From assembly GCF_006345805.1 (NCBI RefSeq), contig NW_021837025.1, positions 62,001 to 126,000 on the forward strand: 64,000 nt of DNA. Reading direction: 5' to 3'. Source of the DNA: Octopus sinensis. Lineage: Eukaryota. Below, one piece after another: positions 1,379-24,934 of the stretch. Every line of letters starts with the position of its first letter. Position 1 is the first letter of the stretch. Below the pieces are notes generated by a model, which was not told the DNA's origin, made no database searches, and saw nothing but the letters and a program-made list of their open reading frames with translations. Made by a program: the position numbers and the translations under genes.

Positions 1379-2495
1379 TCAAGAACAGTCAGTATTGGCA
1401 GAAGTATTATTAGTAATGACACGATTTGTGTGTCTAGTAGTTGGTCTAAAAGACAGCAGAAATTGGTCAGTCCTCAATGTGTTCAGAATTCCTTTCCGGA
1501 AGGGCAGGTTGGCAGTCAGTCGAAAGAACACGTGATTGTCGACAGACCTCTTCCATAAACTTTTGGCCTGTCTTTGATCCTTCATTCGATATGTTTGGGT
1601 CGTGTACGTGCCTTTTTGTCTGAACTTGACAATAAAGTGGAGTCCTCTGTACGACAGTTTGACAATCTTTATTCACGTGAATCGGAACATCCTGAGACTG
1701 TCCAAATATATCACAATTCCAATGCAGCCCACTCCGAATGTGACTGCCAGTCCGTCGATTACTTCCCCCTCAAAAAATTCGAAACTATAGCGTGGGAGTT
1801 TTCTGACGATGTCGAGGAAGTGCACGTCGGCCTCCGTGTTGGTAAGTTGATTCAACATTTTGTGGGCCTCCCGAATGGTGGCCAAGTATTCCATCGAGGG
1901 ATTATCCATCAGAACGTGATTGATGGCCTTCTTCTGGTAGTCCTCGGTCATTTGGTACTCTCCCAACTCACTCTGGAGAAGTAGGAGGCTAACAGTGTCT
2001 GCACTCCGAAAGAACATTCGATTTTGTTCTCTTCAATGTCTTTCCGGAGTTGGAGACACAGCATGTACTTGGTCAGTTCATTCCCCACTTTGGTGGGGTC
2101 AGGGGGATAATACTTGACCCCAAACACCACAATCTCGTCTAAAATATTTGACCATCACAGAAACCTTTGATTGGCTTGTCCATGTTTAGCCATTTTCTCT
2201 CACTGAATCCCCGAATAACGTAGAAGGAGAAAAAGTTGTAGTCCGTTATTCTGTGTTGGTCACAGAACATGTTCAACACAGTTTGTGCTAATGTGTTCTT
2301 CTAAGAACAATTTTTCAGTACAAATACGTCTTTGTCGATTGTGAACTGCTCTCCAGTCAGATTCATTACTACACAAGGCTTTGAAATGCCACTAAGTTTT
2401 TCTGATCTTCCATTTTTGGGTGTTCTGTTCGTGTTTGTGGGCACCATTCCGAAAGAACTGTCAAAGGAAAGGTTGCTCATGTTAAAAGTAGACAT
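1379..2495 (-). CDS. FERM-domain protein, band 4.1/coracle-like (multi-exon; 3' end approximate)
   Basis: FGVKYYPPDP, YMLCLQLRKDI, LLASYF, QSELGEY and AKSLWKRSVDNHVFFRL are FERM N/M/C motifs spread over several frames. Confidence 0.85.
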
Positions 2496-2682
2496 TCTAA
2501 AACAAGCTATATTTCTTCCTTTCCGGATTCTTAACCGATAAAATATTTTATGCTTTGTTAGAAATAAAATAAAACTTGGAAATTTCTATGAATTGTATCG
2601 GCATATTAAAATGTCCATTTGAGACATTTTCCATTTTAGCAACAAAAATGACAAGCATATATTTCCAGTGACAAGACTCCAT

Positions 2683-4128
2683 GTGACTCCTCTGAAATTG
2701 GCCACCTCTGAAATTGACCACACTTATAAAATTATCTTAAGAAAAATTCGAATTTCCATTGAAAGTGACCAATTCTCAAATTGACCATAAATTTTAAAAT
2801 ATATTTTATATAATTTGCAAATTAATAAAATTTCAGTTATTTTATGTCTTCGAACAATTCTCATGGTAATTTAACTTATATCAAAAAATACAGATTTTAA
2901 CTTATAAAAATCAAAATGAAGATGTTTCATGTCAGTATTTGGCTGATAGATTTTCCCATTTGTTTAAAAAGAAGATTTCCGGAAAAACAATTAATAATAT
3001 TATTTTGAAAAAAGATTTTTTTCTCAAAGAGTGTAAAAAACAAAATCTATCTTCAAAAATGCGCATAGACTCAAGTTCCCACAGCTTGATGCTATGTTAG
3101 TTGAATGGATGGATTCGATTGAGTCTAAAGGTAATTTGTACTAATTTATGATTAAGGTGGCGTTCTTAATGATGCTTTAATTTCAAATAAGGCTAATTTA
3201 TTCGCAGCTGAATCAAAACTGGATAATTTTAAAAACTCAAATGGATACCTTCATAAATTCAAAAAGAGGCATGGTTTTCAAAATTTCGATCAGCACAGAC
3301 TTGCATGTCTCCGCGCAGGCTGCTGCACAGGGAGTGGGGCCTGGCTGGATGCTCTCCCTGTCCCTTCCACCGGTAACCTATTAGACAAAGATTGCCTACG
3401 AATTGGTTTATCATTGCGTCTTGGATTGGAAATCTGCGAAATACACAAATGTCGTTGTGGTGCTGTCATTGACCGTTTTGGTCTACATCCCCTTTCCTGT
3501 CGTCGCAGTGCAGGGCGCGCACCACGCCATGCAGCACTTAACGACGTTATTCAGAGGGGGCTCACGGCCGCTGGGATTCCATCAATCCTCGAACCCGTCG
3601 GGCTTGCGAGGGGAGACGGAAAAAGACCCGACGGCCTATCGACTTTCCCGTTTGAGTTCGGCAAGTCTCTGTTATGGGATGCGACGTGTTCAGACACTTT
3701 CTCGGAGCTCAACCTTCCTTCTTCAGCTGTCGAGCCTGGCTCAGTCTCTCGCAAAACCGAGAAGATGAAGATTGGAAAGTACAAGGAGCTCTCTGAACGG
3801 TATCTGTTCACTCCCATCGCCGTCGAGACTTCCGGCGTCATCGGCGAAAAGTCTCTTTCCTTTCTAAAAAAGCTTGGCCGCATGGTCTCCCATAAACGGG
3901 GAGACCCACGCGAGTCCAAGTGGCTTTTCGAAAGGATTTCCTTGGCCATAGTACGTGGAAACTGTGTTTCCATTTACGAGGCCGGAAATTTAGTTAGTTA
4001 ATAACTATTTGTTAATTACATATAACATTCATTTAGAAAGATTGATTTTATTTCTCAAATTGGCCATTTCTCGAATTGACCACAAAAACACGTGGAACCA
4101 AAAATGGCCAATTTCAGAGGAGTCACTG
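2683..4128 (+). mobile_element. pogo/Tigger DNA transposon remnant (HTH part of transposase, DDE domain absent)
   Basis: 22-bp TIR GTGACTCCTCTGAAATTGGCCA at 2683 and its inverse at 4105-4126, ending CTG-TA. Translation ISGKTINNIILKK and FPQLDAMLVEW...FKNSNGYLHKFKKRHG matches CENP-B-type HTH domains. Confidence 0.85.
3291..4001 (+). mobile_element. 5'-truncated CRE-like non-LTR retroelement: Zn-knuckle plus restriction-like endonuclease, open frame
   Basis: SGAWLDALP...LRLGLEIC...CRCG...HPLSC...RH...EPVGL..GDGKRPDG...WDATC...KYKEL...P.AVETSG...LFERISLAIVRGN is the C-terminal signature of CRE-clade RLE elements. Confidence 0.85.
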
Positions 4129-4429
4129 TATTTTGAAAATCGTGCTATCTTAAACGCCAAATTTGACTAATTATTAGGAATGTGGTGTTCATCATATCCG
4201 AATACTTCGAACTGACTGAATTTTCTTCTGCCCTCGAAGTTTAGACTGCATCTTGTCTCGCCTTGCCTCATAAGAGTCACAAAAGTTATACTCATTCCAT
4301 CACATTTTCCGCCAGAATTAGAAGTACCACTAGTACAGTGAATGGTTTCCATCGGTCTACATTGATAAGTGTTATGACAAAGGATACCAGTGGTCTACAC
4401 AGGTCTAACAGACTACGTGGTCTATACAG

Positions 4430-4680
4430 GTTTAACAACTAAGTGAATAATTATGTTATGAGAAGTGTACAAGGAATGTGACAGTTTTGGCATTCCAGAA
4501 GGAGTATGAATTGTCGAAAATGAACAAATAACTGGGCCTCTCCCCTCCCACCAATCTTGTGCCCTCGAAGCCATGTTGAAAGGCTGCTTCAGGAATAAAA
4601 TGTCGAATACGGCCAAGAATCAACTTTTCAAGAATTCTCGAGAAACTAAACTTTCTTAAAGCATTTCTTGGAAACTTGGA
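4430..4680 (-). pseudogene. Degraded LINE reverse-transcriptase fragment
   Basis: SRILEKLILGRIRHFIPEAAFQHGF closely matches SKILERLVLGRIEDFLPERHFQ at about 12500. Confidence 0.7.
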
Positions 4681-4689
4681 AGACGCCAA

Positions 4690-4876
4690 AGGAACTTACG
4701 GATTAGAGTCTCTATACACCCAATACATTAAACCGGCAATTGGTTACGGATGTACAGTATGGGGAAGCAATCAGGCATATACAAATGTCAAAAAATCGAC
4801 AATATTCAAATGGAGATGCGCTGTAGAACACAGAGAAAAGATGCGAAGGTTTCTAAAAGAGGCTGGGATCACCTGA
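4690..4876 (+). pseudogene. LINE 3' end fragment
   Basis: LYTQYIKPAIGYGCTVW is a LINE ORF2 C-terminal motif. The ending EHREKMRRFLKEAGIT* is shared with 20740-20850. Confidence 0.6.
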
Positions 4877-5227
4877 AATAGTTAAATATGGTTATGACGG
4901 TGTTTTTGGTGCTAATAAATAATTTAAAATTTGCTCATAATAACCTCGACGAGGACATATTTCCTAGACAAGCGGAAAAGTTGGGCCTAGATGAAGTGGT
5001 TAAAAACTTGATTTGTTCCAAATTCTAAGTCACTCATATTTACATCGGTTTACTTTAATATCAGCCAACTTGAGCACACCTCATTCTGGTGATTAGGTTA
5101 TGTTCTTGTGTGGTCCACTAGATCTCCCACCTCCCATAGTATTTGGATATTTTAATAGTAAAAATTCAAGAAAAAATTTCGGAATTTTAAAACTTAAATA
5201 AAAATTGTACAATCGTGTCTAGTGGGG

Positions 5228-6701
5228 ATGAAGTTAAGCAAATTAGGGATCGACAAATTAAATTTAGAAGGCAAGCGAGTACTAATGCGGTATATAAAAC
5301 AATATAATAGGCAGAGTAGATTTCAATGTACCAATGAAGGGGGCACATATAACTAACAATCAAAGGTTGTCGGCTATCCACAATATAGAATTGTGGCTGC
5401 CCTTCCCTCCATTAAATACGCCTTGGACAACAAGGCCACGTGCGTCGTATTGATGAGCCATTTGGGACGACCTGACGGGTTGCCCAATCTAAAATATTCA
5501 CTCAAGCCAGTCGCCACCGAACTGAGCCGACTTTTGGAAATGTCAGTCCTTTCCTTATTCCAGGGATGTCACATTTGTCCCCGACTGTCTCGGAGCTGAC
5601 GTATGCAGGACTAATAGCCCGCCAAAAGTGATACTTCTCGAGAACTTGCGATTCCACGTGGAGGAGGAGGGGAAGGGAATTTCAGAGGGCGGGAAAAAAG
5701 TGTGGATTGAATAATTCACAAGGTGACTGCCTCGGAAGAGCAAATGAAGGCCTTTGGGGACGAGTTGTCGACTTATGGAGATGTTTATGTCAATGATGCC
5801 TTCGGGACTGCCCACAGACCTCACAGGTTGCACGTGCACTCACACCGGAAGTTCGATGACAAGAATCAGGTTACCACAAAGAGCTGCCGGGTTTTTACTA
5901 AAGAATGAGCTTGATTATTTTGCGTGTGCGTTGGAGAGTCCCAAACGTCCATTTGTAGCAATTTTGGGGGGGTGGTGTTTCAGAGTGACAAATTAGAGCA
6001 AAAGTGGTGGATAAAATCCCAATAATCGACAACCTTCTGGGAATAGTGGACGATCTGATAATCGGGGGAGGGATGTGCTTCACATTTCTCCGGGAAATAA
6101 AGAAAATGGAGGTATAGTCCAGTAATCACCAGATTGGGTCCTCGATGTATGACCAAGAGGGGGCAGGGAAGGTTCACGACTTTTGGAGGAAGGCGAAGGC
6201 CAATGGGGTCACCATTCACCTCCCTGTTGACTTTGGGGTCGCCTCCGAGTTTTCAGAATTGGCGGAGAGGACAGAAAGTACAATTGAGTCAGGAATTCCC
6301 GCCAATTGTTTGGGGCTTGATATTGGTCAATCCTCCTCAGATATATTTGGTGGTGTGATTGGCAGGGCTGGGACAATCGTGTGGAATGGGTAGTCGTGGG
6401 CTGACAATTGCAGTCCTCCGGGAGTGTTCGAGTTCCCTAATTTTGAGAGAGGGACCAGGCTGATGGCGGAGGCAGTAGGGAAGGCGACAGAGGGAGGGAC
6501 AGTCTCCATAATAGGTATAGGAGGGTCAGCACAGTAGGTGGAGGAGACACAGCAACTGCTCTGGTCAATCTGGGGATAACTGCGAGAATGAGCATGGTCA
6601 GTACTGGAGGGGGTGCCGCTCTAGAACTGCTGGAGGGTGGGTTTCACTCGTACATTATAGGGAAAATACTGCCCGGAGTGAACTATTTGACAGATGCATA
6701 A
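5228..6701 (+). CDS. PGK: Phosphoglycerate kinase, 11 exons
   Basis: [27 protein letters not shown]...[10 protein letters not shown]...[12 protein letters not shown]...NDAFGTAHR...GGGDT...[14 protein letters not shown]. The frame is restored by ten GT-AG introns of 21-25 nt. Confidence 0.97.
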
Positions 6702-10298: not shown

Positions 10299-11353
10299 TT
10301 ATGTGACATGGGCAACTATGTCGTTATGGGCAGTCTGTCCTTTTACGTGTTTCTGTGGCAACCGCAGAAAAGGTATTCAATATTGAATATAGCAATTTAT
10401 ATATGGAAGAGTGCAGATTAATCAATTATTCTAATTAAAAATTGGATTTGAATTATCTTTTAAAAATGGCTTACCCAAAAGAAACACCCGAAAATAATTA
10501 TTACAATCTAAAGCTACTGATGATCGAGAAGACGTTGCCCCTCAGGATCGCAATGGATATTCTTTGGAACAACCATTGCTTCTCCCGAGGCTCTCTCTGT
10601 CTTCTCGAGATCAGATTCCCGATTTCCCCGACGAGTTCGAACGATTTTTGGCTCATGACCCCGGAGGTTTCTACGGATATTGGGGAGAAGATGAAGTTGT
10701 CCAACAGGTTGGAATATTTCTGAACTTTATGTGCCTCAGCCTTCTCAGCGGCTGAGCCTGGACTGATCGCGGAGTCAACTATATTGGTCTTTGAGAAGGT
10801 GTCTGTGCACGTGGAGTCCCACGCGAGGCATTTCCCATTACTCCACGGGAAAATGGTGACTCCATCTGGGCGTTTACCGTCTCCACGGTCAAGCCCAACG
10901 GGTTCCAGTTCTGTCGGGAATCCAGCTGCTTGTAACGCAGCCGAAATAGTCTCGTTGATAGCGGAGTGTCTGGGAGCACGGCCAGCACTCCCTCTGCATG
11001 ACAGGGGATGTAGTCCTTTGGTATCGACTTTACTACCGCATCGGCATTGGCCCCCCGAACAGACATTAAGTCCCAAGCGTATTGCTACGCCAATCCTCAC
11101 ACAGTCATTATCGAGAAGGGTATATTAAGAAAAAGTGATTTGTATCCGAGTGAGAATACAAATGGATTCTATCCGTTATTGACGTCTATAGTCTGTTTTA
11201 TGATTATAATTATCATAGTTTTGCTTTTTCGAGGCCATTAATTAACGAGTCAGGACTCGAGGTTTCAAAAAATCTCGAGTCCCTATTTTATCTAAATGAT
11301 CCCTGTGAGATTTTAAGGTTGCCCATAGGGGCCTGATTACCCATGTCACATAA
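10299..11353. mobile_element. Non-autonomous TIR element, copy B (contains a CRE-like insert)
   Basis: Perfect 14-bp inverted ends: TTATGTGACATGGG (10299) and CCCATGTCACATAA (11340-11353). Confidence 0.7.
10501..11122 (-). mobile_element. 5'-truncated CRE-like RLE retroelement tail, copy 2, open frame
   Basis: LLDNDCVRIGVAIRLG...CRCG...HPLSC...EPVGLDRGDGKRPDG...WDSTC...KY...LFQRISIAILRGN is homologous to 3291-4001. Confidence 0.85.
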
Positions 11354-18018: not shown

Positions 18019-19489
18019 ACTTGTTTTTGACGGTTTCACTTTTGGTTTTATCAATTGATATTTTGTTGTATGACTATCCATGTAGCGAGATTACAAATGA
18101 TTGAATTTGAACGAATTTAAAAAATAAACTTTTTTTTGATATATTTAAGTAATGTAAACTTGTTCAGTTTTTTTTGGTTTTGAACTTTCGATTTCATAAA
18201 AAAAGCGCATAAATATATGTTTCTCAGAAAAACTAAAAATGTAAAATACTTTATTCCATGTTGAGAATAAATTTGAGACATATTCGTAATATTTTCTCAT
18301 TGTAAATTAATAAGAAAAAGCATGTTCAGTTTTTATTTTTGTGGCGGTTATCAGAGGGTGGCGGATATGAGAGACTTTATTGTATGACTAATATAAGTCA
18401 CTTTGAAGAAATATGAGTAATACATTATTGAAAATTTTTTGTTGAATACTTCATGGACTGATAAATCCATTTTAATTCTCTAACAGAGCAGCACTAACAT
18501 TTAAAATATATCATGACTGAGGGTTTTAAATGAATCCAAACTGCAAAAATTTTGCCACATCCTTTAACTCAGGACCACCTCAACATTAGCGCTCGAGATT
18601 TCTGAGAGCAAAGTAATAGATAGCAGTTTTATAGACACAGGCTGTCTTACCCATATTATAGATAAATTGACTAACTGACCCATTTAGGTAAGTAGTGATT
18701 GATTCGAAAACGTGAGATTAAGTAAACAAAAACAGAATTTTAAATGAAACCTAAAAACATTTTATGATATCATAACATCTAAGTTAAGCAATTAAAGGTG
18801 AGTGACCGATTTATGGTCTCAGTATTCACCTCTGATTTGAAGATAAGTGATGGTTCTTGTAAATTAAAAGTGGTTCTATGCTCGACAAAAAATTTTTTGT
18901 ATACAATTTTAATCAATCTTATTTCTAAACATAAAGGAATAGAATTAGAGACACAGTAAAAGATTGAAAATATTATTTCGTCAGATGGCCCCTGCAATAA
19001 TCACAAATCATAATTCCAGGATAAAAATCATCATTCGAATTAAAATAATAATTAAAATATATGCCGACACACACCACAAAAAAACTAACAAACGTGTTTA
19101 ATTTATTAAAATTATTGATATCAATTTCAAAAATTTCGTTATCTGAATTATTAAAAATATAGATTTGGCCTGGTCTGTATGAAAAAAGATTCAACATCGA
19201 CTGATTTATATGTTTTCATTTATCCGTGTAATTTACGTATTCTCAATCCATGTTTCTTTTTGAATTTATTCAAGAATTCATTAGAATTTTTAAAATTACT
19301 TGATTGTAATTTATCCGCAAATAATACTTCCTATGTAGATATTGAATCATCATTTACAAAACCACCTAAAAATTGATTTTTCGGAAACTAACTTTATACC
19401 CTATCATTTATTCAATCAACTTCTCTTCAAGCTTTAAAAACTTCGGTTTATGCCCAGTTTTAAAAGAAGCTTGATAATTTTTGAATCTT

Positions 19490-23519: not shown

Positions 23520-24470
23520 AGTGATGAGACTGAATATTTGTGGAAAATCAGACTGTAAATCCCTTTTAGAGTAAACAGATACTCGTGCTGGTGTCAAAAA
23601 TGAAGAAACAGTTACAGTTCTTTCATGTACAAATTGGATAGAAAATGATAATCAGAACAAGCCTCTGGTAATCAGAACAAGTCTCCGCATTGTTTGAAAA
23701 TTTTCAAAATACATTAATGACCAACGTACAGATGACGTTTAAAAATGTAATAATATAAATGAGGAAAATATTTCCACAATAGTGCCACAAGTAATATATT
23801 TCCACAAATGAATCAGCTTTGGTGATTTTTTGGTCCTACTCAGCGGTGATTTGACAATTCTGCAACAGGAAACAAAATAAAAGATTATTTTCGTGTAATA
23901 TATTCTTCGTCACATGCATCAATTGTATGTCAGATTGTGGATTATAGGATTCGATGTGCAAATGTCGAGAGGAAAAAGTATATGATTTCAGCCAAAAAAA
24001 CACTAAAAAATTTGTATCTAATTTATTCCACGCAACATGTATTGCACATTTAATTTACAATTGTGCTTTAAGGATAAGACTAAATTATCCTGTAGTGGAT
24101 AATTTAATTACCTTTATAAAAGGAATTTGTCAAAGAATAATTGTCGAAGGCAACTATTTGCTGAAATAGAACCTATTGTTACTAAATGGGAAAGCTGTCT
24201 CTGAGCAATCAAGTACTACGCGGAAAATTTTCCAAGAGTGTTAGAAATATGCAATTCGCTGAAATATTGATTTGAAGAGCAATGGAATCAATAAAAATGA
24301 AGGACTTTTTAATGATTTAAAGGAGATATGGAATGAATATTCCCCACTCGTTGATGTTCTTAGTGAAATTGAGTTAAGAAACTTTTCTATCCAAAAGGCA
24401 TATAATTTTCAGAGAAAACTTGATTTAAAAGAAGATGCATGTAAAATAAATGAATATATCGAGAATAGGT
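23520..24470 (+). pseudogene. Decayed hAT-related transposase
   Basis: LFHATCIAHLIYNCALRIR and EPIVTKWESCL*AIKYYAENFP correspond to the hAT CxxH and P.xTRW motifs. Many stops. Confidence 0.65.
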
Positions 24471-24507
24471 ATTTCCATACTTCGAAATATTTCCATACTT
24501 CGACCTC

Positions 24508-24934
24508 TTCCATACTTCGACCTCTTAGCCTCCTCAGCCTGAGCACTGGCAGAACCCGGTTAGTGATGGACTTGAGTAACACCGACGCGGAGAACGAGTC
24601 AACACAAGTTGCATCCCAAATCAGGGACTGCCTTCCCTGAAAGGGAAGGTAGTCATCCCGTCAGGACGCTTTCATCACTCCGGCAGAGACCGACTGGCTC
24701 TAGAGTGGGGGGAAACCTGCCGACTCTAGAGCACTTTTGACGATGTCATTGAGGTGAGTGTGGCGAGAAATTCTGCCAGCACTCTTCTTGCACGATAGGG
24801 CGTGGAAACCGTTCGGGAGATCGTAGACCCGCACCGGCATGGGTGGGGCTGACAGATGTCCAGGGCCAAGTGTAAGCAAACACCAATCCGTAAGGATTCG
24901 TCGTCCAGAAGTAGTCCCGTACTAGGGGTAGGGT
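24508..24934 (-). pseudogene. CRE-like RLE fragment, copy 3, frameshifted and truncated at both ends
   Basis: [17 protein letters not shown]...CRCG...[15 protein letters not shown]...EPVGL..KRPDG...WDATC...AEEAKRSKYG. Confidence 0.85.

What the first reader, a model, noticed from the sequence alone, without database searches (positions are those of the whole stretch)
2683..4128. Transposon DNA-binding domain fused in frame to a retroelement restriction-like nuclease, inside pogo TIRs
Seen in sequence: removing a 26-nt GT-AG intron (3131-3156) gives an unbroken frame from ATG 3094 to the stop at 4001 (293 aa). It reads MLVEWMDSIESKG|GVLNDALISNKANLF...FKNSNGYLHKFKKRHGFQNFDQ directly into HRLACLRAG..SGAWLDALP..CRCG..RPDG..WD..KY..ETSG..RGN. 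The cassette lies between the 22-bp pogo TIRs, and the DDE domain is gone. Established knowledge: the first part is a CENP-B-type HTH of pogo/Tigger transposases, the second a CRE-clade Zn-knuckle plus PD-(D/E)xK endonuclease. Inference: this could be a natural chimeric targeted nuclease, with an HTH that binds TIR-like sites, mobilisable in trans. Caveats: a chance in-frame insertion has roughly 1-in-6 odds, and two frameshifts (about 2880 and 3060) break the more N-terminal part of the transposase.
Basis: partly seen in the sequence, partly recalled or inferred. Interest (0 to 1): 0.75.

Follow-up and report, generated by a model that had tools for sequence, protein, structure and literature searches.

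The report
Retrotransposon fragment nested in dead pogo
The in-frame "DNA-binding domain plus nuclease" reading frame is real, but it is best explained as an accident of one jumping gene (a LINE-type retrotransposon of an octopus genome) replacing the middle of another, already decayed one (a pogo transposon), so it is ordinary genomic debris and probably not a new nuclease gene.

Summary
There are perfect 22-bp inverted repeats at 2683-2704 and 4105-4126. Removing 3131-3156 gives a 293-codon frame from ATG 3094 to the stop at 4001. The first ~57 residues are a Tc5/pogo HTH. The rest is the C-terminal linker, Zn-knuckle and restriction-like endonuclease (RLE) of a non-LTR retrotransposon: its AlphaFold model hits only R2 proteins significantly in the PDB.

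The functional reading is not supported.
- Window 3280-4013 is 99.6% identical to the 3' end of an RT-encoding ORF in Octopus sinensis, including that ORF's own stop codon. The open frame is therefore inherited from a very young copy.
- A longer copy of the same pogo family shows that about 1.15 kb, the whole DDE domain, has been replaced here by the retro fragment plus 23 orphan bases.
- The pogo part is decayed. An 11-nt deletion and a 1-nt deletion lie upstream of the ATG, which is an internal Met of the second HTH. The first HTH is out of frame.
- The frame needs a 26-nt intron. Introns this short are known in animals only from myxozoans and dicyemids.
- No second copy of the fusion was found, though the octopus genome itself could not be searched.

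An in-frame junction is a 1-in-3 event. Verdict: nested-transposon debris, low interest.

The parts
2681..2704 (+). Left terminus of the pogo-family element. The 22-nt inverted repeat is 2683-2704. The terminal CA is followed by an extra T, and the flank reads TC instead of TA.
   Evidence: repeat; L002 shows TA|CAGTGACTCC...
2688..2790 (+). Subterminal direct repeats CTCTGAAATTGRCCAC, likely transposase-binding sites. The window has two tandem units where L002 has three, plus a further pair at 2755-2790.
2844..3130 (+). Decayed 5' part of the pogo transposase gene: the first HTH region and the start of HTH_Tnp_Tc5. It is broken by an 11-nt deletion at 2878|2879 and a 1-nt deletion in the A-run 3055-3059. 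ATG 3094 is an internal Met (..LDAMLVEW..).
3131..3156 (+). 26-nt GT...AG intron-like segment containing TACTAAT. It sits at the same codon in four diverged octopus pogo copies, and removing it restores colinearity with intronless relatives.
3157..3279 (+). Last 41 codons of the pogo HTH_Tnp_Tc5 domain (GGVLNDAL...FKKRHGF). The native continuation in L002 is RMTKLHGEMRTND... into DDE_1.
3280..4013 (+). 3'-terminal 734 bp of a non-LTR retrotransposon ORF (linker helices, CCHC Zn knuckle, RLE), with its own stop codons at 3999-4004 and 9 further nt (4005-4013). It is 99.6% identical to L001 11034-11767 (Octopus sinensis).
4014..4036 (+). 23 AT-rich orphan bases at the 3' junction. They match neither the retroelement copy nor the pogo copy, and no nearby template was found.
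4037..4130 (+). 3' end of the pogo element: subterminal repeats, right inverted repeat 4105-4126, terminal TG 4127-4128, and TA flank 4129-4130. It is 98-100% identical to L002 2003-2094.
3094..4001 (+). The conceptual chimeric reading frame (293 codons after removing 3131-3156).

Best explanation
This is a dead, internally deleted copy of an octopus pogo-family DNA transposon. About 1.15 kb, covering the end of the DNA-binding region, the whole DDE catalytic domain and the C-terminus, has been replaced by the last 734 bp of a young, high-copy RLE-type non-LTR retrotransposon plus 23 orphan bases.

The retro fragment lies in the same orientation as the transposase gene and happens to join it in frame (1 chance in 3, or 1 in 6 counting orientation). 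Its open frame and stop codon are those of the parent retroelement, preserved only because the copy is very recent. It is not a gene.

Most likely route (inferred, about 50%): one retrotransposition event. Target-primed reverse transcription began in the 3' part of the pogo copy. That region in L002 contains GTTGTTCT, close to the retroelement's TTTGTTCT, which starts 7 nt after its second stop codon. The 5'-truncated cDNA was then joined 1.15 kb upstream, deleting the target DNA in between, as is known for LINE insertion-mediated deletions.

Shown: the identities of both parents, the breakpoints, the decay of the pogo part, and the youth of the retro part. Inferred: the order and mechanism of events, and the absence of function.
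For: - Retro parent. Window 3280-4013 equals L001 11034-11767 with 3 mismatches in 734 bp. The L001 ORF (603 codons) has RVT_1 followed by the same C-terminus and the same stop.
- Abundance. The family is common: further 5'-truncated copies lie at window 10504-11121 and 24450-24932 and at L001 5283-6449, and there are more than 15 annotated O. sinensis paralogues.
- Pogo parent. Window 2689-3282 equals L002 256-858 (94%) and window 4037-4130 equals L002 2003-2094 (98%). L002 carries DDE_1 (E = 2.7e-39) in the 1.15 kb that the window lacks.
- Junctions. The 5' junction is blunt (TTTTC|AAAATTTCG).
- Decay of the pogo part: two frameshifting deletions and a damaged left terminus.
- No constraint visible: 0 synonymous vs 5 non-synonymous differences in the HTH exon, 1 vs 2 in the RLE part.
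- The Pfam HTH match covers only profile positions 8-62 of 66, and the first HTH is out of frame.
- A 26-nt intron is below the size known to be spliced in animals other than myxozoans and dicyemids.
- None of the 120 best homologues of the chimera carries an HTH domain. Exact-protein and junction look-ups found nothing.
Against: - The octopus genome and transcriptomes could not be searched at the DNA level, so copy number, expression and splicing remain untested.
- All residues invariant across 53 homologues (CCHC, E104, D117, D133, K163) are intact in the window copy, so the nuclease module itself is not visibly damaged.
- The 26-nt segment has the conservation pattern of a real ancestral intron, and a RefSeq model of another copy uses the same acceptor site. 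Splicing therefore cannot be ruled out.
- The inverted repeats are perfect.
- For the proposed mechanism: the 3' boundary of the retroelement is ambiguous. The L001 copy continues into an AATAAA signal and an A18 tract that the window lacks. The 23 orphan bases are also unusual for a simple TPRT junction.
Confidence: 0.85

Rival explanations
1. Filler-DNA capture. After excision of a full-length pogo copy, gap repair from a sister or homologous template aborted. The two partly resynthesised ends were then bridged by copying or ligating an ectopic piece of a retroelement (DNA or cDNA) plus 23 untemplated bases. This would create the deletion derivative and the insert in one repair event, without retrotransposition into the element.
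For: - The retro fragment sits exactly where the 1.15 kb is missing.
- There is no target-site duplication and no poly(A).
- The L001 copy continues past 4013 into about 38 nt, an AATAAA signal and an A18 tract that the window lacks. The window fragment may therefore be truncated at both ends.
- The 23 orphan bases and the blunt 5' junction are typical of end-joining.
Against: - In two independent subfamily pairs (window vs L001), homology between copies stops at the homologous point, 11-12 nt after the first stop codon. That suggests a natural 3' boundary at 4013, which a random capture would rarely hit.
- Filler segments in transposon gap repair are usually much shorter than 734 bp. This rests on established knowledge and was not tested here.
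Confidence: 0.3
2. Two unrelated events. A pre-existing, roughly 700-bp internally deleted (MITE-like) pogo copy was later hit by an ordinary 5'-truncated retroelement insertion.
For: - Internally deleted pogo relics exist in the window, for example 19184-19464 on the minus strand.
- 5'-truncated copies of this retroelement are frequent: five in 86 kb.
Against: The insertion would have to fall within 0-23 nt of the older deletion breakpoint in a roughly 700-bp element, a chance of a few percent.
Confidence: 0.12
3. The fusion is an expressed gene encoding a TIR-binding HTH tethered to an RLE nuclease, possibly spread by trans-mobilisation of the element.
For: - The 293-codon frame is intact.
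- The nuclease motifs are intact.
- The model of the RLE half is confident and R2-like.
- The inverted repeats are perfect.
- The intron-like segment is ancestral to the family.
Against: - Frame intactness is explained by 99.6% identity to a parent copy.
- Only a truncated second HTH is present. The first HTH is frameshifted away, and the ATG is an internal codon.
- There is no sign of selection.
- A 26-nt intron would be needed.
- The left terminus is damaged and one binding repeat is lost.
- In R2, target recognition and cleavage depend on the N-terminal Zn-finger and Myb domains, RT, thumb and linker surfaces, and bound RNA, all of which are missing here (PMC10499050).
- No second copy or gene model was found.
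Confidence: 0.04

Closest known systems
LINE insertion-mediated target deletions (described for human L1 in cultured cells and in human-chimpanzee comparisons)
   Same: A 5'-truncated non-LTR retrotransposon copy replaces about a kilobase of target DNA, with no target-site duplication.
   Different: The element here has a restriction-like endonuclease rather than an APE endonuclease. There is no poly(A) tail at the junction, and 23 orphan bases lie at the 3' junction. The mechanism is inferred, not shown.
Internally deleted non-autonomous DNA transposons with filler DNA (maize Ds from Ac, Drosophila P-element deletion derivatives)
   Same: The termini and 5' coding remnant are kept, the catalytic domain is lost, and foreign sequence lies at the deletion junction.
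   Different: The filler here is 734 bp of a retrotransposon ORF and happens to be in frame with the transposase remnant.
R2 non-LTR retrotransposon protein (Bombyx mori and Taeniopygia guttata cryo-EM structures)
   Same: The order is linker helices, CCHC Zn knuckle, then RLE, C-terminal to the RT. The fold match has Foldseek probability 1.00, E = 2.5e-5 to 7e-4 and TM 0.43-0.60 (PMC10499050).
   Different: Sequence identity is only 15-18%, and sequence and profile searches do not reach R2. The octopus family is dispersed rather than rDNA-specific. Its clade (CRE, NeSL, R4, Hero or other) was not determined.
pogo/Tigger (Tc5-type) transposons and CENP-B or jerky-like derivatives
   Same: HTH_Tnp_Tc5 followed by DDE_1 in the longer copy, termini beginning CAGT, and TA flanks.
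   Different: The window copy lacks DDE_1 and has frameshifts. The family carries a 24-26-nt intron-like segment inside the second HTH.
Host-transposase fusion genes (for example SETMAR and other captured transposase DNA-binding domains)
   Same: A transposase DNA-binding domain joined in frame to an unrelated domain.
   Different: Known cases are spliced host genes under purifying selection and conserved across species. None of that is shown here, and the partner is another transposable-element fragment.

Membership tests
pogo/Tigger (Tc1-mariner superfamily) DNA transposon | Terminal inverted repeats flanked by a TA target-site duplication | tested here: met
   Perfect 22-nt repeats. L002 shows TA|CAGTGACTCC...GGAGTCACTG|TA. 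In the window the right flank is TA and the left is TC with an extra T in the terminus.
pogo/Tigger (Tc1-mariner superfamily) DNA transposon | N-terminal CENP-B/Tc5-type helix-turn-helix DNA-binding region | tested here: met
   HTH_Tnp_Tc5 E = 8e-14. CENP-B 1HLV residues 80-130, E = 0.029. 362 pogo-type relatives found by HMMER. The first HTH is only weakly recognisable and is frameshifted.
pogo/Tigger (Tc1-mariner superfamily) DNA transposon | DDE_1 catalytic domain | tested here: not met
   Absent from the window copy. Present in the family copy L002 (P0135, DDE_1 E = 2.7e-39). The window element is a non-autonomous deletion derivative of the family.
RLE-bearing non-LTR retrotransposon (R2-like architecture) | Endonuclease domain located C-terminal to a reverse transcriptase in one ORF | tested here: met
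   The L001 ORF 9944-11755 has RVT_1 followed by the same C-terminal 240 residues. No APE domain is recorded in 120 relatives. The window fragment itself has no RT.
RLE-bearing non-LTR retrotransposon (R2-like architecture) | CCHC zinc knuckle followed by a PD-(D/E)xK-type catalytic core | tested here: met
   Invariant across 53 homologues: C57, C59, H69, C73, then E104, P116-D117, D133 and K163. The model has alpha-beta-beta-beta-alpha-beta topology.
RLE-bearing non-LTR retrotransposon (R2-like architecture) | Fold similarity to a solved RLE | tested here: met
   The seven significant Foldseek PDB hits are all R2 proteins, probability 1.00.
CRE clade of non-LTR retrotransposons | RT-based phylogenetic placement with CRE1/CRE2/SLACS/CZAR | not tested
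   No reference CRE sequences or full-length octopus copy were available. Only the RVT_1 and RLE architecture is shown.
CRE clade of non-LTR retrotransposons | Site-specific insertion (spliced-leader genes in the founding members) | tested here: not met
   Five copies in 86 kb lie in unrelated flanks. The only hint is a 12-nt motif shared by the L001 5' flank and the element's 3' end.
Domesticated or chimeric transposase-derived gene | Purifying selection and conservation beyond one locus | tested here: inconclusive
   0 synonymous vs 5 non-synonymous (HTH exon) and 1 vs 2 (RLE part) differences against paralogues. No constraint is visible, but the counts are too few for a test. No second copy was found in the limited look-ups.
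Domesticated or chimeric transposase-derived gene | Transcription and correct splicing | not testable with these tools
   No octopus RNA-seq or genome DNA search was available.

The most novel reading that the evidence does not exclude
The ancestral mini-intron is spliced in octopus and the locus is transcribed. This would yield a 293-residue protein in which a single Tc5-type HTH tethers an R2-like Zn-knuckle/RLE module to pogo-end-like sequences: a natural transposon-derived targeted nuclease carried by a trans-mobilisable element.
Probability: 0.03. Interest if true: 0.65.

Novelty: new member of a known kind. Interest (0 to 1): 0.15.

Why it matters
As it stands, this is one more nested transposon in a repeat-rich cephalopod genome. 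It is a useful warning that long in-frame 'fusion' ORFs arise by chance when a very young retroelement fragment lands in an old element.

It would matter only if the fusion were expressed and selected. RLE modules are of current interest for genome-insertion tools, and a natural HTH-RLE fusion would be a new way of aiming one.

Two by-products may interest transposon specialists. First, the C-terminal linker/Zn-knuckle/RLE domain of a large marine-animal LINE family has no Pfam model yet folds confidently like R2. Second, an octopus pogo family carries a 24-26-nt intron-like segment.

Tried and rejected
- A word-indexed protein search with the stitched pogo N-terminus found nothing. The exhaustive HMMER search was needed to reach the family.
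- Sequence and profile searches of the RLE half against the PDB gave only noise. Pfam has no model for it.
- Exact-protein look-ups of the 195-, 280- and 281-residue versions of the chimeric product are not on record.
- The 31-nt junction sequence is absent from JGI metagenome contigs. This is uninformative for octopus.
- I considered that the retroelement specifically targets this pogo family, because the L001 3' flank looked pogo-like. I rejected it: L001 has no pogo sequence around its copy.
- I considered that 4014-4021 (AATTACAT) is the pogo codons K-L-H immediately after the junction. I rejected it: L002 reads AAGTTACAT there, and homology resumes only at 4037.
- I looked for a local template for the 23 orphan bases. 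Only chance 10-12-mers turned up.
- I fetched two more octopus copies of the LINE family (L005, L006) to define the 3' end. One belongs to a different subfamily with an unrelated UTR, and the other is 3'-truncated.
- A 2026 octopus repeat-annotation paper mentions neither pogo nor CRE.

Full report
**Observation.** The sequence features are as described.
- A 22-nt inverted repeat (GTGACTCCTCTGAAATTGGCCA) lies at 2683-2704 and 4105-4126. It is 100% complementary, has no other match in the 64-kb window, and none is expected by chance.
- GC content jumps from 0.18-0.33 in the flanking element to 0.41-0.61 across about 3283-3982, which already suggests two different origins.

**Identity of the C-terminal 80%.** A search of 5.8 billion proteins gave 649 hits, nearly all unannotated marine metagenome fragments at 45-67% identity. 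There was also one Octopus sinensis protein at 97% identity that carries a reverse-transcriptase domain.
- Its locus, L001 (scaffold VCDQ01002078.1), matches window 3280-4013 with 3 mismatches in 734 bp.
- In L001 this stretch is the end of a 603-codon ORF. That ORF has RVT_1 followed by the same C-terminus and the same TAA TAA stop.
- So the window's open frame and its stop codon are the retroelement's own.
- The quoted 'NFDQ' belongs to the retroelement (...LRKNFDQHRLACL in P0027). The junction is therefore 3279|3280, not about 3290.

**Is the C-terminal part a restriction-like endonuclease?** Yes.
- Pfam has no model for this domain, and sequence or profile searches do not reach any solved structure.
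- An alignment of 53 homologues shows invariant C57, C59, H69, C73 (a CCHC knuckle), E104, P116-D117, D133 and K163.
- AlphaFold2 on that alignment gives a confident model (pLDDT 92.8, pTM 0.89). It has three linker helices, a small knuckle and an alpha-beta-beta-beta-alpha-beta core.
- In Foldseek against the PDB, the seven significant hits are all R2 retrotransposon proteins from Bombyx, zebra finch and a turtle. Probability is 1.00, E is 2.5e-5 to 7e-4 and TM is up to 0.60. They are followed only by weak matches to other PD-(D/E)xK nucleases.
- This is the linker / CCHC zinc finger / RLE arrangement described for R2 (PMC10499050).
- Relatives carry RVT_1 and no APE domain.
The CRE-clade label was not testable here.

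**The retroelement family is abundant.** Other 5'-truncated copies lie at window 10504-11121 (minus strand) and 24450-24932 (minus strand), and at L001 5283-6449. More than 15 O. sinensis gene models belong to it.

**Identity of the N-terminal 20% and of the host element.**
- With the 26 nt removed, residues from 3073 to 3279 match Pfam HTH_Tnp_Tc5 end to end (E = 8e-14). From ATG 3094, only profile positions 8-62 of 66 remain.
- An exhaustive HMMER search found 362 pogo/Tigger-type relatives. One, at 85% identity, starts exactly after the 26-nt segment and runs on into a DDE_1 domain.
- Its locus, L002 (O. sinensis VCDQ01010602.1), holds an 1,845-bp copy of the same family with TA|CAGTGACTCC...GGAGTCACTG|TA ends.
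- Window 2689-3282 aligns to L002 256-858 (94%), and window 4037-4130 aligns to L002 2003-2094 (98-100%).
- The native continuation after ...FKKRHGF is RMTKLHGEMRTND... and then the DDE domain. In the window, these roughly 1,150 bp are replaced by the retro fragment (3280-4013) plus 23 bases (4014-4036) that match neither parent and have no detectable local template.

**State of the pogo part.** Relative to L002, the window copy has:
- an 11-nt deletion at 2878|2879;
- one A missing in the run 3055-3059;
- an extra T inside the terminal CAGTG;
- TC instead of TA at the left flank;
- two instead of three tandem 16-nt subterminal repeats.

They cut the first HTH away from the second. ATG 3094 is an internal methionine of the second HTH.

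L002 is itself broken, so no autonomous partner is in evidence.

**The 26-nt 'intron'.**
- Removing exactly 3131-3156 restores perfect colinearity with intronless relatives: SIESKG|GVLNDAL in the window against MESKGVILNDNL in P0123, whose locus translates without interruption.
- The segment is present at the same codon in four octopus copies that are only 65-94% identical to each other.
- In those copies the flanks and the terminal AG are conserved, GT is conserved in three of the four, the interior has diverged, and the lengths are 24-26 nt.
- That is the pattern of an ancestral intron of this pogo lineage.
- A RefSeq model of one copy (XP_029657973.1) uses the same AG|G acceptor, but with a donor about 480 bp upstream.
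- However, introns under 30 nt are reported in animals only for myxobolid myxozoans and Dicyema (PMC13644364). Splicing of this segment in octopus is therefore unproven, and without it there is no ATG-initiated chimeric frame.

**Is the fusion more than chance?**
- Given a retro fragment in sense orientation, an in-frame join has probability 1/3, or 1/6 counting orientation.
- Nothing else needs explaining. The RLE frame is open because the copy differs from a paralogue at 3 of 734 positions (1 synonymous, 2 non-synonymous).
- The 41-codon HTH exon differs from L002 at 5 positions, all non-synonymous. These counts are too small for a formal test but give no hint of constraint.
- None of the 120 best database homologues of the chimera has an HTH domain. 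Apparent 97-98% coverage comes from the retroelement's own linker region.
- Exact look-ups of plausible gene-call products and a junction scan found nothing.
- These negatives are weak, because the octopus genome itself could not be searched.

**Mechanism.** The retro fragment exactly fills the gap left by the missing DDE region, so insertion and deletion were probably one event.

I favour retrotransposition with target deletion.
- The fragment is 5'-truncated.
- In two independent subfamily pairs, homology between copies ends at the homologous point, 11-12 nt after the first stop codon. This suggests that 4013 is a natural 3' boundary.
- L002 has GTTGTTCT 18 nt upstream of the right breakpoint, close to the retroelement's TTTGTTCT. 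That motif is also duplicated at the 5' flank of the L001 copy.

Against this reading:
- The L001 copy continues into AATAAA and A18, followed by a possible 7-8-bp target duplication. The window fragment might therefore be 3'-truncated as well.
- The 23 orphan bases look like an end-joining product.

Capture as filler DNA during gap repair is therefore a serious rival. Insertion into an older deletion derivative is a weaker one. All three give the same verdict on function.

**Function.**
- In R2, target choice and cleavage need the N-terminal zinc-finger and Myb domains, the RT, thumb and linker surfaces, and bound 3'UTR RNA (PMC10499050).
- The fragment here keeps only the linker, knuckle and RLE.
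- It is joined to an incomplete second HTH of a two-HTH DNA-binding region. CENP-B aligns only over residues 80-130.
- A working targeted nuclease is thus unlikely on architecture alone. This is an inference.

**Context.**
- The element lies between FERM-domain exons on the minus strand (1673-2130, with a likely first coding exon at 2301-2495) and the start of a phosphoglycerate kinase gene on the plus strand (about 5228 onwards).
- That places it in the space between two divergently oriented genes.

**Verdict.** The domain assignments are right, with the clade untested. The chimeric-nuclease reading is not supported. This is a nested, decayed transposon pair of known kinds.

Noticed in passing
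window 3131-3156; window ~19.33 kb (minus strand); L002 ~708-732; L004 ~3640-3667: A 24-26-nt GT..AG segment interrupts the HTH_Tnp_Tc5 domain at the same codon in four octopus pogo copies that are 65-94% identical to each other. The ends are conserved, the interior has diverged, and removing it restores colinearity with intronless relatives. RefSeq model XP_029657973.1 uses the same acceptor. Introns this short are reported in animals only from myxozoans and dicyemids, and dicyemids are parasites of cephalopod kidneys. An origin by horizontal transfer is conceivable but untested.
   Followed up: partly
L003 (Dictyocoela muelleri SDVU01006198.1) vs window 2897-3279: The closest named relatives of this octopus pogo family outside cephalopods are 'Tigger/CENP-B-like' proteins of the microsporidian Dictyocoela muelleri (47% identity over the DNA-binding region, intronless). 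This is a possible case of transposon exchange between distant hosts.
   Followed up: partly
window 10504-11121 (minus strand) and 24450-24932 (minus strand); L001 5283-6449: Further 5'-truncated copies of related RLE-type LINE subfamilies, one of them 95.6% identical at protein level to an L001 copy. The family's linker/Zn-knuckle/RLE domain has hundreds of homologues but no Pfam model.
   Followed up: partly
L001 9923-9934 and 11757-11768; 11790-11829: The 12-nt string ACTATTTGTTCT occurs both at the 5' flank of the L001 retro copy and just after its stop codons (starting 3 nt after the second). About 40 nt further on lie AATAAA, an A18 tract and then TTTGTTC. It is unclear whether the element ends shortly after the stop codons and selects targets by 3'-end annealing, or has a 50-nt UTR with poly(A).
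   Followed up: partly
window 19184-19464 (minus strand): A second, older pogo relic (about 65% identical), containing only the second HTH and the first residues after it.
   Followed up: partly
window 1673-2495 (minus strand) and 5222-5599 (plus strand): FERM-domain exons (FERM_M, E = 1e-6) and the 5' exons of a phosphoglycerate kinase gene (PGK, E = 9e-12) flank the element in divergent orientation. The element therefore sits in a shared upstream region.
   Followed up: partly
L004 3001-4216 (O. sinensis VCDQ01003981.1): The RefSeq protein 'jerky protein homolog-like' XP_029657973.1 is itself a chimeric model. An integrase-like fragment (..GRPKAPWIQGQVER..) is spliced onto a pogo copy, showing how readily such fusions are annotated in this genome.
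   Followed up: no
window 4676-4876 (plus strand): A short ORF (..LYTQYIKPAIGYGCTVWG..) resembles, from memory, the region downstream of the RT domain in jockey/CR1-type LINEs. It is probably another retroelement relic just downstream of the pogo copy.
   Followed up: no
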